NCBI RefSeq assembly: GCF_001194135.2 | Contig: NC_068989.1 | Span: 4,142,699 to 4,206,698, forward strand | Direction of reading: 5' to 3' | Length of the DNA stretch: 64,000 nucleotides | DNA from: Octopus bimaculoides | Taxonomy: Eukaryota | In this document: in pieces, positions 14,031 through 51,813 of the stretch | Layout: each line of letters begins with the position of its first letter | How positions within the stretch are numbered: position 1 is the first letter of the stretch | Notes under the pieces: generated by a model | Database searches by the model: none | Told to the model about the DNA's origin: nothing | What the model saw: only the letters and a program-made list of their open reading frames with translations | Made by a program: the position numbers and the translations under genes

Positions 14031-14244
14031 TATTGTTTTCTACTGTAGGCAAAAGACCCGAAATTTTGGGGGAGGTGGCCAGTCGATTAGATCGACCCAG
14101 TACACAACTGATATTTAATTTATCGACCCCGAAAGGATGAAAGGCAACGTCGACCTCGGCGGAATTTGAACTCAGAACTCAAAGTCAGACGAAACGCCGT
14201 TAAGCATTTCGTCCAGCATGCTAACGGTTCTGCCAGCTCGCCGC
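14031..14244 (-). mobile_element. tRNA-derived SINE (Meta-like central domain), full length
   Basis: Minus strand: GCGGCGAGCTGGCAGAACCGTTAGC (A box), GAGTTCAAATTCC (B box), GCCTTTCATCCTTTCGGGGTCGATAAATTAA domain; several sister copies in the window. Confidence 0.9.
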
Positions 14245-14290
14245 GTTGCCTTTACCAAATATTAAGACATATCTGCAATTGATTTCAAGC

Positions 14291-14492
14291 TCTGGCACAA
14301 TTCCACAAATTTGGGAGGGGGGGGTAGTAAGTCAATTACATCGACCCCAATATTCAGCAGGTACTTATGTTTTAGACCCCGAACGGATCAATGGCAAAGT
14401 CGACTTCGGTAGATTTTGGACTCATTACGTAAAGGCGGACGAAATGCCGCAAAGCATTTCTCCCGGCATGCTAGTGATTCTGCCAGCTCGCC
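14291..14492 (-). mobile_element. tRNA-derived SINE (Meta-like), tandem second copy
   Basis: Same head (GGCGAGCTGGCAGAATCACTAGCATGCCGGG) and body as 14031-14244. Confidence 0.85.
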
Positions 14493-16290: not shown

Positions 16291-16317
16291 CTACATAATG
16301 ATTAATAATAGATGTAT

Positions 16318-16530
16318 TCCTTTCTACTCTAGGCACAAGACCTGAAATTTTAGAGGCTGGGGATAGTTGATTACATCGATCCGAGTGCAAAACTTGTACT
16401 TATTTCATCGACCTGGTAAGGGTGAAAGGCAGAGTGGACTTCGGCGGTATTTGAATTCAGAATGCAAAGGCAGACGATATCTGCAAAGCATTTTGTCCGA
16501 TGTGTTAACGATTCTGCCAGCTTGCAGCCT
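16318..16530 (-). mobile_element. tRNA-derived SINE (Meta-like), full length
   Basis: TTTCTACTCTAGGCACAAG tail, GGTGAAAGGCAGAGT domain, GTTAACGATTCTGCCAGCTTGC head. Confidence 0.85.
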
Positions 16531-17859
16531 TAATGCTAGATATAATGAGCCAATCAGCCCGAATTAGAAACAGAAGACGACAACTGACGGAATTTAACGA
16601 TGTTAGTTAAGTGTTGCTCTTGTCTTAAATAACTAAATTCCATAATATCTTTTGTAGGTCTTCTGAAACATATTTTACGAAATTAATATTCCATTTGAAT
16701 AATGACATACAAACTCAATCTCACATTTGTATATTTGTCTATATCTTCAATATGTATCTACCTATCTATCTATCCGTCTAACCGGTTAGCTACCTAGCTA
16801 TCAATCTGTCAATTTGTCAGTGTATCGGTCTCCTTAAATGTCTTTGTCTATCTAAATAGCTATTTATTCATCTACCTATCTTCCTCTTTACCATCACTCA
16901 ATCTATCTGTCCTCTTGCGTGTGTATGTATACGTATATATATATGTATATATATATATATATNNNNNNNNNNNNNNNNNNNNNNNNNNNNNNNNNNNNNN
17001 NNNNNNNNNNNNNNNNNNNNNNNNNNNNNNNNNNNNNNNNNNNNNNNNNNNNNNNNNNNNNNNNNNNNNNNNNNNNNNNNNNNNNNNNNNNNNNNNNNNN
17101 NNNNNNNNNNNNNNNNNNNNNNNNNNNNNNNNNNNNNNNNNNNNNNNNNNNNNNNNNNNNNNNNNNNNNNNNNNNNNNNNNNNNNNNNNNNNNNNNNNNN
17201 NNNNNNNNNNNNNNNNNNNNNNNNNNNNNNNNNNNNNNNNNNNNNNNNNNNNNNNNNNNNNNNNNNNNNNNNNNNNNNNNNNNNNNNNNNNNNNNNNNNN
17301 NNNNNNNNNNNNNNNNNNNNNNNNNNNNNNNNNNNNNNNNNNNNNNNNNNNNNNNNNNNNNNNNNNNNNNNNNNNNNNNNNNNNNNNNNNNNNNNNNNNN
17401 NNNNNNNNNNNNNNNNNNNNNNNNNNNNNNNNNNNNNNNNNNNNNNNNNNNNNNNNNNNNNNNNNNNNNNNNNNNNNNNNNNNNNNNNNNNNNNNNNNNN
17501 NNNNNNNNNNNNNNNNNNNNNNNNNNNNNNNNNNNNNNNNNNNNNNNNNNNNNNNNNNNNNNNNNNNNNNNNNNNNNNNNNNNNNNNNNNNNNNNNNNNN
17601 NNNNNNNNNNNNNNNNNNNNNNNNNNNNNNNNNNNNNNNNNNNNNNNNNNNNNNNNNNNNNNNNNNNNNNNNNNNNNNNNNNNNATTCATCTACCTATCT
17701 TCCTCTTTACCATCACTCAATCTATCTGTCCTCTTGCGTGTGTATGTATACGTATATATATATGTATATATATATAGGTAGGTAGGTAGGTAAAGAGGTA
17801 GTGTGCGTTTGCGTAATGGTGTACGAGAGTGTGTGCGTAGGTATGTATGTCTGTTTTTG

Positions 17860-18080
17860 TCTTTCTGTTTGTGTTTATGCTTCCGGTACCGTTTGGCAAC
17901 CGGTGTCAGTTAGTTTACGTCCCCGAAATATAGCCGTTTAGTATAAACAAATGCCGATAGAATGATTACCTGAGTTGAAATGAATACGTCCTAGGGGTCG
18001 ATTTATTCGATTGAATCCTCCAAAGCGGTGCTCCAGCATGGCCGCAGCCCAGTGAGTAAAACAAATAAAACATAAATGAT
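17860..18080 (+). mobile_element. CORE-type SINE 3' half
   Basis: TTTACGTCCCCG...CCGATAGAAT...GGGGTCGATTTATTCGA...GCGGTGCTCCAGCATGGCCGCAG, as at 46720-46925. Confidence 0.8.
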
Positions 18081-18383
18081 ATAAGCTCATAGAAATGAAA
18101 AAACAAAAACGTTCTCTCCGAGTGTGAATTGTGTGTGAGATGATGTTTGAGTTTCTGCTCACATTTCATCTATCACTCACATTGCCTGTTTGAGTTACAC
18201 TCTGCCATCTTAGACTGATTCCTCTTGTAACTTTATCACCTCGTTGTTTCTTATTTCACCTCTCAATGTTATGACTTATTGTCCTATAGAACCATCGAGT
18301 AAGATTACAGACACCTCATAGATTTAGATATTCTGTTGTATTAGATTAAGAAGGAAGTTGTTACCTACACACACACACACACA

Positions 18384-29851: not shown

Positions 29852-30037
29852 GTTTAGGGTACTGTAAGGTATGGTAATACGGAAGAGTTAAAGAGAAGTA
29901 AATTAAAGTAATTTCGAAATGGATACGCTGGGTTACGTTAAGTTGAGATTTTGTAAATTAGAGCTAGCTAGGGCCGTATAATCTATGGCAGGGTCAGTTA
30001 AGTTGAGATAAACTAAGATAATATTTAAAGCAATCCT

Positions 30038-30244
30038 AAGGCAGCGAGGTGACACAATCATTAACATTCCGGACAAAATGCTTAGCAGCATTTCGTTTAT
30101 TTATATTCTGAGTTCAAATTCTACCGAGGCCGACTTTGCCTCTCGAGGTCACTAAAATAAGTACCAGTTGATCATTGGGGTTCGATGTAATCGACTTATC
30201 CTCTTCGCCAAAGTTGCTGGCCTTGTGCTGAAACTGAAATGAAT
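30038..30244 (+). mobile_element. tRNA-derived SINE (Meta-like), full length
   Basis: GGCAGCGAGGTGACACAATCATTAAC head, GAGTTCAAATTCT B box, AAAATAAGTACCAGTTG, GCTGGCCTTGTGC tail. Confidence 0.85.
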
Positions 30245-30956
30245 ATTCGTTAATATTAAGTAAGGTTGTATGTCATAGGATAATGCATGATAAATGAAGT
30301 TGAGGTAAGGCAAGTTCTGTCATCATTGGATTGTCATCAATAGAACTACATCAGCCGCTACGAGTTCCACCTACGCCACCGATACGTTTGAAGGGATTCT
30401 GCTTTTCTGATCTAAAAATTTCGACATAAGAAAATGCTGCATCGGAAGTGATGTTCGTTACAAAAAGAGGAACGTCAGCTGGAACAATAATTTCTACAAT
30501 GGTGTGTGTGTGTTTGAAATATAAGCAGCAGCAACAACGCCAACAGATATTAAAATAAAAATGAACGGCAAAACTACTACTACAACCATTACCAACAACA
30601 ACAACAAAATCAACAACAGCAATCAATGCAAATTTATGTACGTATATTGATGTTGGACTAAAATAACTACAGCAGAAGCTAAAGCAACAACAGTCAAAAC
30701 ATGAGCACTAGCAGCAACAGCAACAGCAGCAGCAGTAATTATATCTACAACAACAATAATGAAGAGAGAAAAAGAAAGATAATGCCGTAGGCAAATATAG
30801 CGGCAAAGAAAACAGAAAGAAACAAGATATGTTCTCTGGTTTAGGTAGAATTTCAGATGAATCAACTGTGTTTTGTGTAGGTTAAACAGGTCACTAACAG
30901 CTTGTAAAAGCCATAAATCCTCAACTGGTGTTTATGTTTACATATACATACATACA

Positions 30957-37665: not shown

Positions 37666-38681
37666 AGTGCGCGCATTTTATCACTTTAAATTTCAAAATA
37701 TTTAAAAATAAAAACAAGCAACAATTAATCAATCAGCCATAACTGACATCCGAAACACAAATGAACATTTTTTTTATACATCAAATGCGGTTTCGTTATG
37801 CTGAGTGGGTCATCTACTCACATCNNNNNNNNNNNNNNNNNNNNNNNNNNNNNNNNNNNNNNNNNNNNNNNNNNNNNNNNNNNNNNNNNNNNNNNNNNNA
37901 GTTAAATATGAATTTCAAACTGAATAAAAGAATTAAGATATTTTGCGTATTCTTGACTTATAACAAATATATTGTACGTAAATTTCAAAAACGAAATCTT
38001 ATAAGGACCCTAAGTGTTATAAGGATTCTGGTTGAGAACCACTAGACTAGATGAACAGACAAAAACAAATCATCATCATTAGCTAGTTAGAACTCACGAA
38101 TTATAAACAAATGCCGTATTTATTTGTGTAAGTTGGGCTGTTTTATATTTGATGTTTACCAAAAAAAAAAAAAGAACTGCGGTGCCACGAATATACGTAG
38201 CAAAACTAAACCTATGAAAGGGAAACACTTCCTGCCAAAATTTTAAAACTAAATCAGAGGTACGGCTTTTATACATGCTCAACTTATATATGAGCAAATC
38301 TGGTTGTTGTTTTTTTTTAATGTCATTGATTTGGCCATATTATCTCAATAATTGAAGCGAGCTGCTCGACCAGCTACATACAGCAGTCATATCGTGCGCA
38401 TGCATGTGTGTTAGGTAAGATGAGAGAGTATTAGCAGATCTCTGGTTCTGGCTATTCATATTAATGATAACACCTTCTCAATTCAAATACTAAGCGGGTT
38501 GGACATGGTGTATTTAATTACAGATCATTAGATAGATTTTATATTATACAGAGAACTCAACACAAGAGTGCCATAAAATTATAGAATGCGTGAAACACAA
38601 AACTAATAGAAAGATTATCTAATACATTTGTGATGGTGTGTATGCATGTATCTGAGAGCATCTCTCTCTCTCACTCTGTAT

Positions 38682-39352: not shown

Positions 39353-39437
<85 letters not shown>

Positions 39438-39439
<2 letters not shown>

Positions 39440-40495
39440 TCCTGATGCAATGCCAGGTAGTGGCTCTCATGGCTGATTGCAAGTGTTTTGTCTTGGTATG
39501 AAACATGGGCTATAGCAAATATCTGCTCAATACCACAGATTTGTTTCTCAGTTGTTTGACCTTAACCATTCCACCATGTTCCTTGGTGGCCGACGATATG
39601 TGCATCTCTGATCACGATCAGAAGTAGTGGGGGGAGGCATCACAGTTATATGTTGAGGAGAATTCTTTGGAGTTTGGATCATTCACCTTCGGAAACATGG
39701 ATGCATTGTTCAACATCCTTAAACAACTTGTCTTGGCAGGACACCCCCATGTGAGAGGTGGGCTGTTCCACTACTGATAAATAGGGGACAGACACAGCAA
39801 GCAGTGTCAGTCAGCGAGGTACGCTGTTTGGGCCAGGCACCCAAACGGCGAAAATACGTCGTCATAATGCGGGGTATATCAGTGGCGACAAAGATACATC
39901 CCACTGTATAACGATGTCGTTATAACAGTGGTAACGTGGTTACGAACGTTAGTAGGAGTTTCGAAATGGAACAACTACGGACAGTGAAAAATTTGAAGGA
40001 ACTGAACTACATACAGTGAATATTAATATAAACATTGTGAAAAATATATAAATTCTATTGAAAAAAGATTCTGAAGAAAAGCTGTCTGATAAACCTGGAA
40101 CTCTAACACAACTGAACTACACACAGTGAAAAATAATATTAATCCGTTTGAAGGATTTGAGTCAGGTCGCTACATCTCTGTAGCACTACCAGTAAACAAT
40201 GTAGACTACTACTACCTGCGGCATTCAGAAGCAAAAAAAATAACGTCGTGTGAAAAAAATCTCAAAGAGGGGAGGTGTTGTGGTGGACACCCCCAAGTGA
40301 GAAGTGGGCTGCTGCACTACTGATAAACAGTGGATAGACACAGCAAGCAGTGTCAGTCAGCGAGGTACGCTGTTCGAGTCAGTCACGCAGACGACGAAAA
40401 TACGTCGTCATAATGCGGGACAGATCACAACCCTTATTCGGGGACCTTTTGCGTGGAATGGGCTACACGAACTGAAGAAAAATTCTAACTGGATT
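39438..40495 (+). mobile_element. Retroelement UTR-like repeat, split by the TRIM insertion
   Basis: 39438-39728 and 40428-40495 are contiguous halves. The junction region (CAACCCTTATTC.GGGACCTTTT...AATTCTAACTGG) is the reverse complement of 59705-59770 in a second, uninterrupted copy. Confidence 0.7.
39729..40427 (+). mobile_element. TRIM: miniature non-autonomous LTR retroelement, Gypsy-like
   Basis: 5' LTR 39729-39881 and 3' LTR 40276-40427, both TG...CA and about 86% identical by hand alignment. PBS-like TGGCGACAAAGAT at 39883, PPT AAAGAGGGGAGG at 40264-40275, TSD CAACT/CAACC. Confidence 0.9.
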
Positions 40496-40547
40496 ACTAC
40501 TACTACTACTACTACTACAACTAATACTAATAATAATAATAATACTG

Positions 40548-40602
<55 letters not shown>

Positions 40603-41349
40603 CACTGCTGCTGCTACAAAAATGACAATAACAGAAATAACAACAGCAGTATATTGTTATTAGTAAGCAATTATGATATTCCACGTTATTGTTCTTATTC
40701 TTGCTGTTGTCTTATTTTACACTTATTATCTATGTTATTACAATATTCGTCATCAGTGACTTCTTTTACAACCACCAACTTCATTTGCAAAAACAGCAAA
40801 GCAGGTACCACTACCTGCGCCAGCATCGCACTCGTACTCACTGTTTACCATCGTCACCGTCACAATTATCACCTCCATTTCTTGACTTTCTATCTCATTA
40901 GCAAGCGAATTTTCTAAAACTTTTCCATTGATATTTATTAGCAGAAGCAATGCACAAATATGTGTATATCGATAATATGTATTAACTATACAACTACGTA
41001 AATATGTGTGTGTGTCTGTGTACGTGTGTGAGTGTCTGTGTGTGTGTGTGTGTGTAAGTGCGGGTGTGTATGTGTGTGAGCACATGTGTATGTCATTTAT
41101 ACATTTATATAGTTATATATATGCATATATATATATATATATATATATANNNNNNNNNNNNNNNNNNNNNNNNNNNNNNNNNNNNNNNNNNNNNNNNNNN
41201 NNNNNNNNNNNNNNNNNNNNNNNNNNNNNNNNNNNNNNNNNNNNNNNNNNNNNNNNNNNNNNNNNNNNNNNNNNNNNNNNNNNNNNNNNNNNNNNNNNNN
41301 NNNNNNNNNNNNNNNNNNNNNNNNNNNNNNNNNNNNNNNNNNNNNNNNN

Positions 41350-44320: not shown

Positions 44321-44733
44321 CTTTTACCTTTTACTTGTTTCTATCATTGGACTACGACCATACTGGGGCATCGTCTTGATGGCTTTTAGTCGAACAGATC
44401 AACTTAAGTACTTATTTTCCAAGCCTGATGCTTATTCTATCGGTCGCTTTTGTTGAAACGCTTTGTGTACGAAGACGTACATAAACCAACACCGGTTGTC
44501 AAGCAGGAGCGGGGGGGGAACAATCATAAAAACACAAACACATACTCACACACAGACATATATGGGACAGGCTTCTACACAGTTTCTGTCTACTAAATTC
44601 CCTCACAACTCATTGATCGACTTATGGATGTAGTAGGCGTTTGTCCAGCATGGCGCATAATGGAACCGAACTCGCATCAATTTGATTGCGAAGCGACCTT
44701 CTTCTTTAACAGCACAACTAGACATGCGCCTAT
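44321..44733 (-). mobile_element. CORE-type SINE, full length, decayed
   Basis: Colinear with 53108-53490 from the CTTTTACTTGTTT tail to the CATGCGCCTAT head. Confidence 0.75.
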
Positions 44734-46434: not shown

Positions 46435-46660
46435 ATCTTTTAATGGTTTCAGTCTTTGCAGAGTGACATGCTGGAACACTGCCTCAGAGGATCGCAGTCG
46501 AACAAATTTACCCTAGGACTTAATGCTTTTTTAAAAATATTTTGCTACTTATTGTATCCTTCTCGTTTGCCGAACCGCTAACGTTACGGAGACGCGAACA
46601 ATCCAACATCAAGTGTCAGCCAGTGATGTGGGGGGATAAAAACGTATATACAGTCATATC
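46435..46660 (-). mobile_element. CORE-type SINE 3' half
   Basis: GCCGAACCGCTAACGTTACGGAGACGC, CCCTAGGACTTA, CATGCTGGAACACTGCC. Confidence 0.75.
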
Positions 46661-46719
46661 TGTGTGTGTGGGGTGTGTGGGTGTGTGTGTGTGCGTGTGT
46701 GTGTGTTTGTATGTTTGTA

Positions 46720-46925
46720 TGTCTGCGTTTGTTCCCACAACATCGCTTGAAAACCGATGCTGGTGTGTTTACGTCCCCGTAACTTAGCGGTTCGGCAAAA
46801 CAGACCGATAGAATAAGTACTAAGATTACAAAGAGTAAGTCCCGGGGTCGATTAGCTCGACGAAAGGCGGTGCTGCAGCATGGCCGCAGTCAAATGACTG
46901 AATCAAGTAATAGAATAACAGAGTA
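46720..46925 (+). mobile_element. CORE-type SINE 3' half, well preserved
   Basis: CATCGCTTGAAAACCGATGCTGGTGTGTTTACGTCCCCGTAACTTAGCGGTTCGGCAAAA...GCAGCATGGCCGCAGTCAAATGACTGAA. Confidence 0.9.
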
Positions 46926-46954
46926 TATTAACGTACCCGTTTATTATATCTTGA

Positions 46955-49613: not shown

Positions 49614-49809
49614 CAATGTTAATTCTCTAAATGAAGTATTAACAGTAACTGCACGATAAAGTGTAGTATAAGCCAGCTGGAGGAGATGTCCTCCTGGGGC
49701 TAAAAGCAACAGTAACATCCACCCCTAGGGGTCAGCCACACTTAAGTGGCAATATACTACACTTTATCGTGCAGTTACTGTTAATACTTCATTTAGAGAA
49801 TTAACATTG
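49614..49809. repeat. Perfect 57-bp inverted repeat with a structured 82-nt spacer
   Basis: 49614-49670 is the exact reverse complement of 49753-49809 (checked base by base). Confidence 0.95.
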
Positions 49810-51580: not shown

Positions 51581-51813
51581 AGGCGGTGTGCTGGCAGAAA
51601 TGTTAGCATGCCGGGCGAAATGCTTAGCGGTATTTCGTCTGTTTTTACGTTCTGAGTTCAAATTCCACCAAGGTCAACTTTGCCTTTCATCCTTTTGGTG
51701 TCGATTAAATAATTACCAGTTATGCACTGGGGGTCGATGTAATCGATTTAATCCCTTTGTCTGTCTTTTTTTGTTCCCTCTATGTTTAACACCCTGTGGG
51801 CAATAAATAGATT
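51581..51813 (+). mobile_element. tRNA-derived SINE (Meta-like) with an alternative tail
   Basis: GGCGGTGTGCTGGCAGAAATGTTAGC head, B box GAGTTCAAATTCC at 51654-51666, tail ATCCCTTTGTCTGTC...CCCTGTGGGCAATAAA. Confidence 0.9.

What the first reader, a model, noticed from the sequence alone, without database searches (positions are those of the whole stretch)
39729..40427. Complete 699-bp miniature LTR retrotransposon (TRIM) with every structural hallmark
Seen: 153- and 152-bp LTRs, each TG...CA, differing at about 20 positions with a 39-nt identical core. A TGG-initiated PBS-like site follows the 5' LTR, a polypurine tract precedes the 3' LTR, and there is a 5-bp TSD (CAACT/CAACC). The empty site can be reconstructed from a sister copy of the host repeat at about 59755-59770. 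The 394-bp interior has no coding capacity, apart from YYLRHSEAKK before the PPT, which recalls the LRRS.R tail of Gypsy pol. Known: TRIMs are common in plants and have been reported in only a few animal groups. Inference: a non-autonomous Gypsy-dependent family, possibly unannotated in cephalopods.
Basis: partly seen in the sequence, partly recalled or inferred. Interest (0 to 1): 0.8.

Follow-up and report, generated by a model that had tools for sequence, protein, structure and literature searches.

The report
Small non-coding LTR retrotransposon (TRIM-type) insertion
A 699-bp jumping-gene relic with two matching end repeats and no genes of its own is really there and fits the known class of miniature LTR retrotransposons, but only this one old copy could be examined, so it is an ordinary find.

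Summary
Two direct repeats (39729-39881 and 40276-40427; 153 and 152 nt) both run TG...CA. They differ by 20 substitutions and 1 indel and share a 39-nt identical core. They enclose a 394-bp interior with no protein domain in any frame. A purine tract, AAAGAGGGGAGG, abuts the 3' repeat. One base after the 5' repeat lies TGGCGACA, the exact complement of the 3' end of Aplysia tRNA-Ser-GCT as published. The flanks are CAACT and CAACC. Removing the element plus one flank copy gives a gap-free 95-column alignment with a second copy of the host repeat at 59706-59800 (minus strand), so the unit arrived by insertion with a 5-bp target duplication.

Structurally this is a TRIM-type non-autonomous LTR retrotransposon, and it is old (LTR K2P distance 0.146).

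Four claims are not supported or could not be tested:
- Dependence on Gypsy specifically.
- The "pol tail" peptide.
- Membership of a multi-copy family of constant short length. There is no second copy or solo LTR in the window, and no accessible database holds the host genome.
- Cephalopod origin and catalogue status.

TRIMs are already known in animals, including bivalve molluscs, so interest is low to moderate.

The parts
39724..39728 (+). Left copy of the 5-bp target site duplication (CAACT)
   Evidence: It matches the right copy at 4 of 5 positions. The sister repeat has a single CAAAC here.
39729..39881 (+). 5' LTR, 153 nt, TG...CA
   Evidence: It is 86.8% identical to the 3' LTR. GC is 53.6% against 35.6% for the window.
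39777..39783 (+). TATA-like ATAAATA in the 5' LTR (ATAAACA in the 3' LTR). Role inferred only.
   Evidence: Read. It lies 31 nt upstream of the A of TCAGTC. This is an inference from generic Pol II core-promoter geometry and was not tested.
39789..39827 (+). 39-nt core identical in both LTRs. It contains Inr-like TCAGTC (39807-39812) and two 5-bp-stem palindromes (GACAC..GTGTC and CAGCG..CGCTG).
   Evidence: One search shows the run. One search shows that with random placement of the 20 mismatches a run of 39 or more arises in 3.4% of trials, and runs of >=39 and >=25 together in 0.26%.
39883..39890 (+). Primer-binding-site-like TGGCGACA, one base after the 5' LTR
   Evidence: It is unique in the window. 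It is the exact complement of 3'-accGCUGU-5' of Aplysia tRNA-Ser-GCT (PMC10886601 Fig. S2). Host tRNAs are unavailable, and the window contains no tRNA gene.
39882..40275 (+). Interior, 394 bp, non-coding, GC 36%. The A/T-rich middle carries 20-33-nt direct repeats (39973-39992, 40000-40032, 40110-40142).
   Evidence: no domains; internal repeats; composition.
39903..39929 (+). Hairpin (11-bp stem with one bulge) just 3' of the PBS, part of a strongly folding putative leader
   Evidence: The stretch 39809-40000 folds at -65 kcal/mol with z = -4.98, and none of 200 shuffles folds as well. A packaging or dimerisation role is inference.
40264..40275 (+). Polypurine tract AAAGAGGGGAGG abutting the 3' LTR
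40276..40427 (+). 3' LTR, 152 nt, TG...CA
40428..40432 (+). Right copy of the target site duplication (CAACC)
39694..39728 (+). Left part of the roughly 95-bp host repeat that was split by the insertion
40433..40492 (+). Right part of the host repeat
59706..59800 (-). Uninterrupted sister copy of the host repeat (the paralogous empty site). CAAAC at 59770-59766 corresponds to the TSD.
   Evidence: It is 83% identical to the reconstructed empty site, with JC distance 0.19.

Best explanation
This is one old, structurally complete copy of a terminal-repeat retrotransposon in miniature (TRIM-type non-autonomous LTR retrotransposon).

Proposed mechanism. A short Pol II transcript starts in the 5' LTR. 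The likely start is the Inr-like TCAGTC, 31 nt downstream of a TATA-like ATAAATA. That transcript was packaged in trans by the Gag/Pol of an unidentified autonomous LTR retrotransposon. Reverse transcription was primed by a host tRNA annealed to TGGCGACA (tRNA-Ser-GCT-like; tRNA-Arg types also end ...GUCGCCA, from memory). Plus-strand synthesis was primed from the AAAGAGGGGAGG tract. The resulting 699-bp double-stranded DNA, carrying two identical LTRs, was inserted by the helper's integrase into a pre-existing ~95-bp interspersed repeat and duplicated 5 bp of target. The two LTRs have since diverged by about 14%, so the copy is dead.

Shown: the anatomy, the insertion as a single unit with a 5-bp TSD, and the lack of coding capacity.

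Inferred: trans-mobilisation as a short RNA (rather than later deletion), the identity of the primer tRNA, the promoter elements, and the helper superfamily, which is unknown.
For: - LTR pair with exact TG/CA boundaries: 132 matches and 20 mismatches over 152 aligned positions, plus 1 indel.
- PPT flush against the 3' LTR.
- TGGCGACA one base after the 5' LTR, unique in the window, complementary to the 3' end of a mollusc tRNA-Ser-GCT (PMC10886601 Fig. S2). Published animal TRIM and Gypsy PBSs in the same figure show 8-12 nt of complementarity and 0-5 nt of spacing.
- TSD CAACT/CAACC and a junction-spanning alignment to an uninterrupted paralogue.
- No protein domain in six frames.
- No tRNA, 5S or hammerhead sequence in the LTRs.
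- A strongly structured leader next to the PBS.
- Host-repeat copies are more diverged (JC 0.19) than the LTRs (0.145), which fits insertion after the repeat spread.
- The interior keeps only PBS-side and PPT-side non-coding sequence. That is what a TRIM has, and random in-situ deletion breakpoints in a multi-kb element would rarely leave it (my reasoning).
Against: Only one copy exists in 64 kb, with no solo LTR and no second interior, so family status is not shown. No helper element with matching LTR, PBS or PPT is in the window. The PBS match is 8 nt to a gastropod tRNA, not to a tRNA of the host, and beyond the 8 nt the match degrades. No canonical AATAAA lies downstream of the proposed start site. 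The LTR termini share only TG/CA as an inverted repeat.
Confidence: 0.65

Rival explanations
1. It is a one-off internally deleted copy of an autonomous LTR retrotransposon (Gypsy, BEL or Copia). A full-length element inserted here and later lost its whole coding region through a deletion in place. It was never mobilised as a short element and is not a TRIM family.
For: There is a single copy in the window and no relatives in any searchable collection. The copy is old (K2P 0.146), which leaves ample time for deletions. The interior could be a 5' leader joined to a 3' untranslated stub.
Against: No gag or pol remnant survives in any frame. Both deletion breakpoints would have had to fall inside the short non-coding ends while sparing the PBS, the leader hairpins and the PPT. 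The interior shows no obvious junction. Its middle is an A/T-rich block with its own short repeats.
Confidence: 0.28
2. It is not a retrotransposon. It is a local tandem duplication (1.28 copies of a 546-bp unit), or a partial tandem of a Penelope-like, retrozyme or DIRS-type element whose repeated ends mimic LTRs.
For: Two direct copies 546 bp apart are formally a partial tandem. Penelope-like elements and metazoan retrozymes do form such pseudo-LTRs (PMC8557442 and PMC7761336, seen as titles and abstracts).
Against: The whole 699-bp unit plus 5 bp is absent from the paralogous site, with a clean junction. The boundaries are exactly TG and CA. The PPT and the tRNA-complementary site sit exactly at the inner LTR edges. 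No hammerhead or other ribozyme is found even at E<=10. DIRS elements make no TSD (general knowledge).
Confidence: 0.03
3. It is an assembly artefact: the two repeats are collapsed or duplicated reads in a gappy draft scaffold.
For: The window is 9% N, and it holds at least one perfect 92-nt duplication across a gap (16866-16957 and 17685-17776).
Against: There is no N inside or next to the element; the nearest gaps are at 37825-37899 and 41150-41349. The repeats differ at 20 positions plus an indel, whereas assembly duplicates are near-identical.
Confidence: 0.01

Closest known systems
TRIMs (terminal-repeat retrotransposons in miniature; first described in plants, later reported in Hymenoptera, taeniid cestodes and bivalves, as reviewed in PMC10886601)
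   Same: Total length is under 1 kb. Terminal direct repeats of about 150 nt start TG and end CA. A PBS-like site and a PPT sit at the inner edges. The TSD is 5 bp and there is no coding capacity.
   Different: Only one copy was seen, so the family property is unproven. No sequence similarity to any described TRIM could be tested.
biv-TRIM of bivalve molluscs (PMC6934838)
   Same: It is a mollusc-lineage miniature LTR element with a G-rich PPT. The biv-TRIM PPT is GGGGAGA, and the tract here contains GGGGAG.
   Different: biv-TRIM has 202-218-bp repeats, a 77-80-bp interior and no identifiable canonical PBS. This element has 153-bp LTRs, a 394-bp interior and a TGG-type PBS candidate.
Helenus, Ajax and Cassandra (TRIMp3: TRIMs with a tRNA- or 5S-derived Pol III promoter in the LTR; PMC10886601)
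   Same: The overall TRIM architecture is shared. Two bivalve Helenus families (Helenus-3_PiIm and Helenus-6_PiIm) also carry TGGCGAC as a PBS, assigned to tRNA-Ser-GCT.
   Different: These LTRs contain no tRNA-like or 5S-like sequence (ARAGORN; Rfam at gathering score and at E<=10). Animal Helenus makes 4-bp TSDs, whereas this element made 5 bp.
LARDs and internally deleted LTR retrotransposons
   Same: They are non-coding LTR elements that depend on a helper.
   Different: LARDs are several kb long with long conserved interiors. This element is 699 bp.
Retrozymes and Penelope-like pseudo-LTR arrangements
   Same: They are short, non-coding, flanked by direct repeats, and occur in invertebrates.
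   Different: These families carry hammerhead ribozymes in the repeats. None is detectable here.

Membership tests
TRIM (miniature non-autonomous LTR retrotransposon) | Total length below about 1 kb with two terminal direct repeats of roughly 100-250 bp | tested here: met
   Total length 699 bp; LTRs of 153 and 152 nt at 86.8% identity.
TRIM (miniature non-autonomous LTR retrotransposon) | LTRs begin with TG and end with CA | tested here: met
   Both copies do so, and similarity stops exactly at these dinucleotides.
TRIM (miniature non-autonomous LTR retrotransposon) | Primer-binding site complementary to a host tRNA immediately 3' of the 5' LTR | tested here: inconclusive
   TGGCGACA lies one base after the LTR and is unique in the window. 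It is an exact 8-nt complement of the Aplysia tRNA-Ser-GCT 3' end (PMC10886601 Fig. S2). Host tRNAs are not available, and the window has no tRNA gene.
TRIM (miniature non-autonomous LTR retrotransposon) | Polypurine tract immediately 5' of the 3' LTR | tested here: met
   AAAGAGGGGAGG at 40264-40275.
TRIM (miniature non-autonomous LTR retrotransposon) | Target site duplication of 4-6 bp, showing integrase-mediated insertion | tested here: met
   CAACT/CAACC, and a junction-spanning alignment to an uninterrupted paralogue with a single CAAAC.
TRIM (miniature non-autonomous LTR retrotransposon) | No gag or pol coding capacity | tested here: met
   The longest ORF is 65 aa. No Pfam family is above its cut-off in six frames.
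TRIM (miniature non-autonomous LTR retrotransposon) | A multi-copy family of constant short length (with solo LTRs) mobilised in trans | not testable with these tools
   There is one copy in the window. The host genome is absent from the protein and DNA collections: 0 hits; no window ORF in the collection; only spurious tandem-repeat hits.
Gypsy-dependent non-autonomous element | LTR ends, PBS, PPT or interior sequence shared with an autonomous Gypsy element | not testable with these tools
   The window has no pol or gag remnant in stop-free segments of 85 aa or more and no other sequence matching the LTR profile. A 5-bp TSD is not specific to Gypsy. The claimed pol-tail peptide has no domain support.
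Helenus, Ajax and Cassandra (TRIMp3) | tRNA- or 5S rRNA-derived sequence inside the LTR | tested here: not met
   ARAGORN finds 0 genes. Rfam gives 0 hits at gathering score and no tRNA or 5S hit at E<=10 in 39400-40500.
Retrozyme / Penelope-like pseudo-LTR | Hammerhead ribozyme in the terminal repeats | tested here: not met
   No ribozyme family is found at E<=10.
biv-TRIM (bivalves) | Repeats of 202-218 bp, a 77-80-bp interior, and the conserved TGATCCCAAAGGAC segment (PMC6934838) | tested here: not met
   The dimensions differ (153 and 394 bp), and that segment is absent from the sequence read.

The most novel reading that the evidence does not exclude
This copy represents an uncatalogued, multi-copy TRIM family in a cephalopod genome. 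It would be the first TRIM described in that class, primed by tRNA-Ser-GCT. Its LTR core (the 39- and 25-nt blocks that stayed identical while the rest of the LTR took about 20 changes) would be kept by gene conversion or by host use as a promoter-like element.
Probability: 0.3. Interest if true: 0.35.

Novelty: new member of a known kind. Interest (0 to 1): 0.25.

Why it matters
If a genome-wide search confirms a family, it would extend TRIMs to another molluscan class and give cephalopod repeat libraries a properly classified entry. Such short elements usually end up as 'LTR/unknown' or are missed altogether. It would also provide a handle (shared PBS and PPT) for finding the helper element. 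This is incremental. TRIMs are established in plants, fungi and several animal phyla, including bivalve molluscs (PMC10886601, PMC6934838). This copy is old and inactive and lies in gene-poor, repeat-rich sequence.

Tried and rejected
1. Finding other copies through translated ORFs.
- The 61-aa minus-strand ORF covering LTR plus PBS found no candidate in the 5.8-billion protein set.
- Exact look-up of 10 window ORFs found none in the collection, so this genome's raw ORFs are simply not there.
- A full HMMER search of 1.84 billion representatives with the 60-aa plus-frame LTR translation gave three hits. All three are tandem-repeat proteins in which a weak ~20-aa resemblance is summed over repeats. 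I rejected them as spurious.

2. Exact-pattern DNA scans with the conserved LTR blocks found nothing. I ran two against metagenome contigs, one against viral contigs and one against prokaryote genome contigs.

3. Reaching host contigs through a multi-copy transposase. The decayed mariner fragment at about 57150-57560 gave one hit at 55% identity. That is too distant to lead to host DNA.

4. Looking inside the window. nhmmer profiles of the LTR, the interior and the host repeat found only the known pieces. A self-BLAST found no other LTR-like pair.

5. Coding and partner tests. Pfam on the element and on all stop-free segments of 85 aa or more found no retroelement domains.

6. Small-RNA content of the LTRs (Cassandra, Helenus, Ajax or retrozyme idea). 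ARAGORN and Rfam were negative.

7. Compensatory-change check of the 5' LTR hairpin CGCTGTTTGGG/CCCAAACGGCG against the 3' LTR, done by eye. The changes are not compensatory, so I make no claim of a conserved structure there.

8. Literature. Nothing on TRIMs in cephalopods turned up in the searchable library.

Full report
**What is in the sequence**

Reading 39400-40800 and running the repeat finder and a self-BLAST shows one strong direct repeat. It links 39739-39881 to 40285-40427, is 143 nt long without gaps, and is 88% identical.

A global alignment of the full units covers 39729-39881 (153 nt) and 40276-40427 (152 nt):
- 132 matches, 20 mismatches (12 transitions, 8 transversions) and one 1-nt indel.
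- 86.8% identity, K2P distance 0.146.
- A longest identical run of 39 nt.

Both units start TG and end CA. The 30 nt outside each boundary are unrelated, so the boundaries are sharp.

**Inner edges**

The 12 purines AAAGAGGGGAGG (40264-40275) lie immediately 5' of the second repeat. Only 0.6% of window positions are preceded by 12 purines, and 0.28% if simple runs are excluded.

One base 3' of the first repeat lies TGGCGACA (39883-39890). This is the only occurrence of that 8-mer on either strand of the 64 kb. It is the exact complement of 3'-accGCUGU-5', the end of Aplysia californica tRNA-Ser-GCT as printed in Fig. S2 of Kojima 2024 (PMC10886601). The same figure shows that accepted PBSs of animal TRIMs and Gypsy elements often have only 8-12 complementary bases and sit 0-5 nt from the LTR.

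Beyond the 8 nt the match degrades. tRNA-Arg species also end ...GUCGCCA, which I recall from memory and did not test. No host tRNA is available: the window has no tRNA gene. The PBS is therefore plausible and well placed, but the primer is not identified.

**Insertion**

The flanks are CAACT (39724-39728) and CAACC (40428-40432). The right flank continues into a sequence that recurs on the minus strand at 59718-59770.

I deleted the element and one flank copy and aligned the result to the reverse complement of the second site. This gives a 95-column alignment that crosses the junction without a gap. It covers 35 nt to the left and 60 nt to the right. The uninterrupted copy has a single CAAAC (59770-59766) where the locus has the duplicated pentamer.

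The 699-bp unit was therefore inserted as one piece into a pre-existing ~95-bp interspersed repeat, with a 5-bp target duplication. The single mismatch between the TSD copies is what about 14% LTR divergence predicts for 10 bases.

The two host-repeat copies are more diverged (83% identity, JC 0.19) than the LTRs. That fits insertion after the repeat had spread.

**Interior**

The 394 bp between the repeats are 36% G+C, against 52-54% in the LTRs and 35.6% in the window. They have no ORF above 65 aa.

Translated in six frames together with the LTRs, they match no Pfam family above its cut-off. No gag, protease, RT, RNase H, integrase or chromodomain appears even at E<=10.

The middle of the interior is A/T-rich and carries 20-33-nt direct repeats.

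The stretch from the putative start site through the PBS (39809-40000) folds much better than shuffled controls: -65 kcal/mol, z = -4.98. It includes an 11-bp hairpin directly 3' of the PBS. That is what one expects of a retroelement leader, but this is an inference.

**What it is not**

- It is not a Cassandra-, Ajax- or Helenus-type element, and not a retrozyme or Penelope-like pseudo-LTR. ARAGORN finds nothing. Rfam finds nothing at gathering score in the whole window. At E<=10 in 39400-40500 Rfam gives only four meaningless sub-threshold hits, with no tRNA, 5S or hammerhead.
- It is not an assembly duplicate. The nearest N gaps are 37825-37899 and 41150-41349, and the repeats differ at 21 positions.
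- A plain tandem duplication does not explain the TG/CA ends, the PPT, the tRNA-complementary site or the clean empty site.

**Mechanism**

The best reading is a TRIM-type non-autonomous LTR retrotransposon. A short transcript would start in the 5' LTR. ATAAATA at 39777-39783 lies 31 nt upstream of the A of TCAGTC at 39807-39812, which is the geometry of a TATA/Inr core promoter. This is my inference.

The transcript would then be packaged by a helper's Gag, reverse-transcribed from a tRNA primer and the PPT, and integrated by the helper's integrase.

What is shown: the anatomy, single-unit insertion with a TSD, and the absence of coding capacity. What is inferred: that the element was already short when it transposed, which tRNA primes it, and the promoter. 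The helper superfamily is unknown, because 5-bp TSDs occur in Gypsy, Copia and BEL.

**The open question**

I could not run that test.

- The window holds no second copy, solo LTR or related interior (nhmmer; self-BLAST).
- It holds no retroelement protein remnant in any stop-free segment of 85 aa or more.
- The host genome is not in any collection I could search:
  - no protein relatives of LTR-derived ORFs;
  - no window ORF in the protein collection;
  - no exact DNA matches in metagenome, viral or prokaryote contigs;
  - a decayed mariner fragment gave only a 55%-identity hit.

I put about 0.65 on a true TRIM and about 0.28 on a one-off deleted copy. My reason is that random breakpoints in a multi-kb element would rarely remove all coding sequence while sparing the PBS, the leader hairpins and the PPT.

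**Comparison and novelty**

TRIMs are known from plants and green algae. In animals they are known from Hymenoptera, taeniid cestodes and bivalves. Helenus occurs in six animal phyla, and Ajax in nemerteans (PMC10886601; PMC6934838).

biv-TRIM differs in dimensions (202-218-bp repeats, 77-80-bp interior) and lacks a canonical PBS. I found nothing on TRIMs in cephalopods in the searchable literature. Repbase and Dfam could not be consulted, and the host was not verified as a cephalopod.

At most this is a new member of a known kind. It is old: at an assumed 1-5 x 10^-9 substitutions per site per year, K = 0.146 gives very roughly 15-70 million years. Those rates are my assumption, not measured values.

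**An oddity**

The 20 LTR substitutions are clustered. They leave identical runs of 39 and 25 nt. Random placement gives a run of 39 or more in 3.4% of trials, and both runs together in 0.26%. The 39-nt block holds the Inr-like motif and two short palindromes. Partial gene conversion between the LTRs, uneven mutation, or constraint could each explain this, and one copy cannot decide among them.

Noticed in passing
window 39729-39881 vs 40276-40427: Substitutions between the two LTRs are clustered. Runs of 39 and 25 identical nt survive among 20 mismatches (P about 0.003 for both under random placement). The 39-nt block holds an Inr-like TCAGTC and two 5-bp-stem palindromes. Gene conversion or constraint could explain it; this remains unexplained.
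   Followed up: partly
window 16866-16957 and 17685-17776: Two 100% identical 92-nt direct copies flank the N gap at 16963-17684. This is most likely a scaffolding or gap-closing artefact of the draft assembly.
   Followed up: no
window about 57150-57560, minus strand: A decayed, frameshifted 3' half of a mariner-type transposase (...GKPILTLFSGLKGPMLKDYLEKGFTISSARY... / ...VLLLHDNAHPHPAAMTVEIFNQLGF), next to a microsatellite. The only database relative is a JGI protein named SETMAR with PF01359, at 55% identity.
   Followed up: partly
window 14031-14247, 14290-14491, 16315-16532, 30037-30253, 51583-51750: An interspersed repeat family of about 200 bp with at least five copies at 69-83% identity, two of them adjacent. 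It looks SINE-like but no tRNA head was detected by ARAGORN or Rfam. A second family lies at 17818-18083, 44321-44608, 46498-46928 and 53103-53375.
   Followed up: no
window 49614-49809 and 59935-60096: Two long imperfect palindromes (80-82% self-complementary). The second lies about 135 bp from the uninterrupted copy of the host repeat and shares 77% identity with 55187-55316. They could be MITE-like or foldback elements.
   Followed up: no
window 39694-39728 + 40433-40492, and 59706-59800 (minus strand): The ~95-bp 'host repeat' has only these two copies in the window, and its similarity ends abruptly on both sides. It was not identified. The locus copy is flanked by long (TAA)n and (TAC)n microsatellites.
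   Followed up: partly
window 40236-40252 vs 39861-39876: A short resemblance between the interior just upstream of the PPT (AAAATAACGTCGT) and the 3' part of the LTR (AAAATACGTCGT). It is too short to separate from chance.
   Followed up: no
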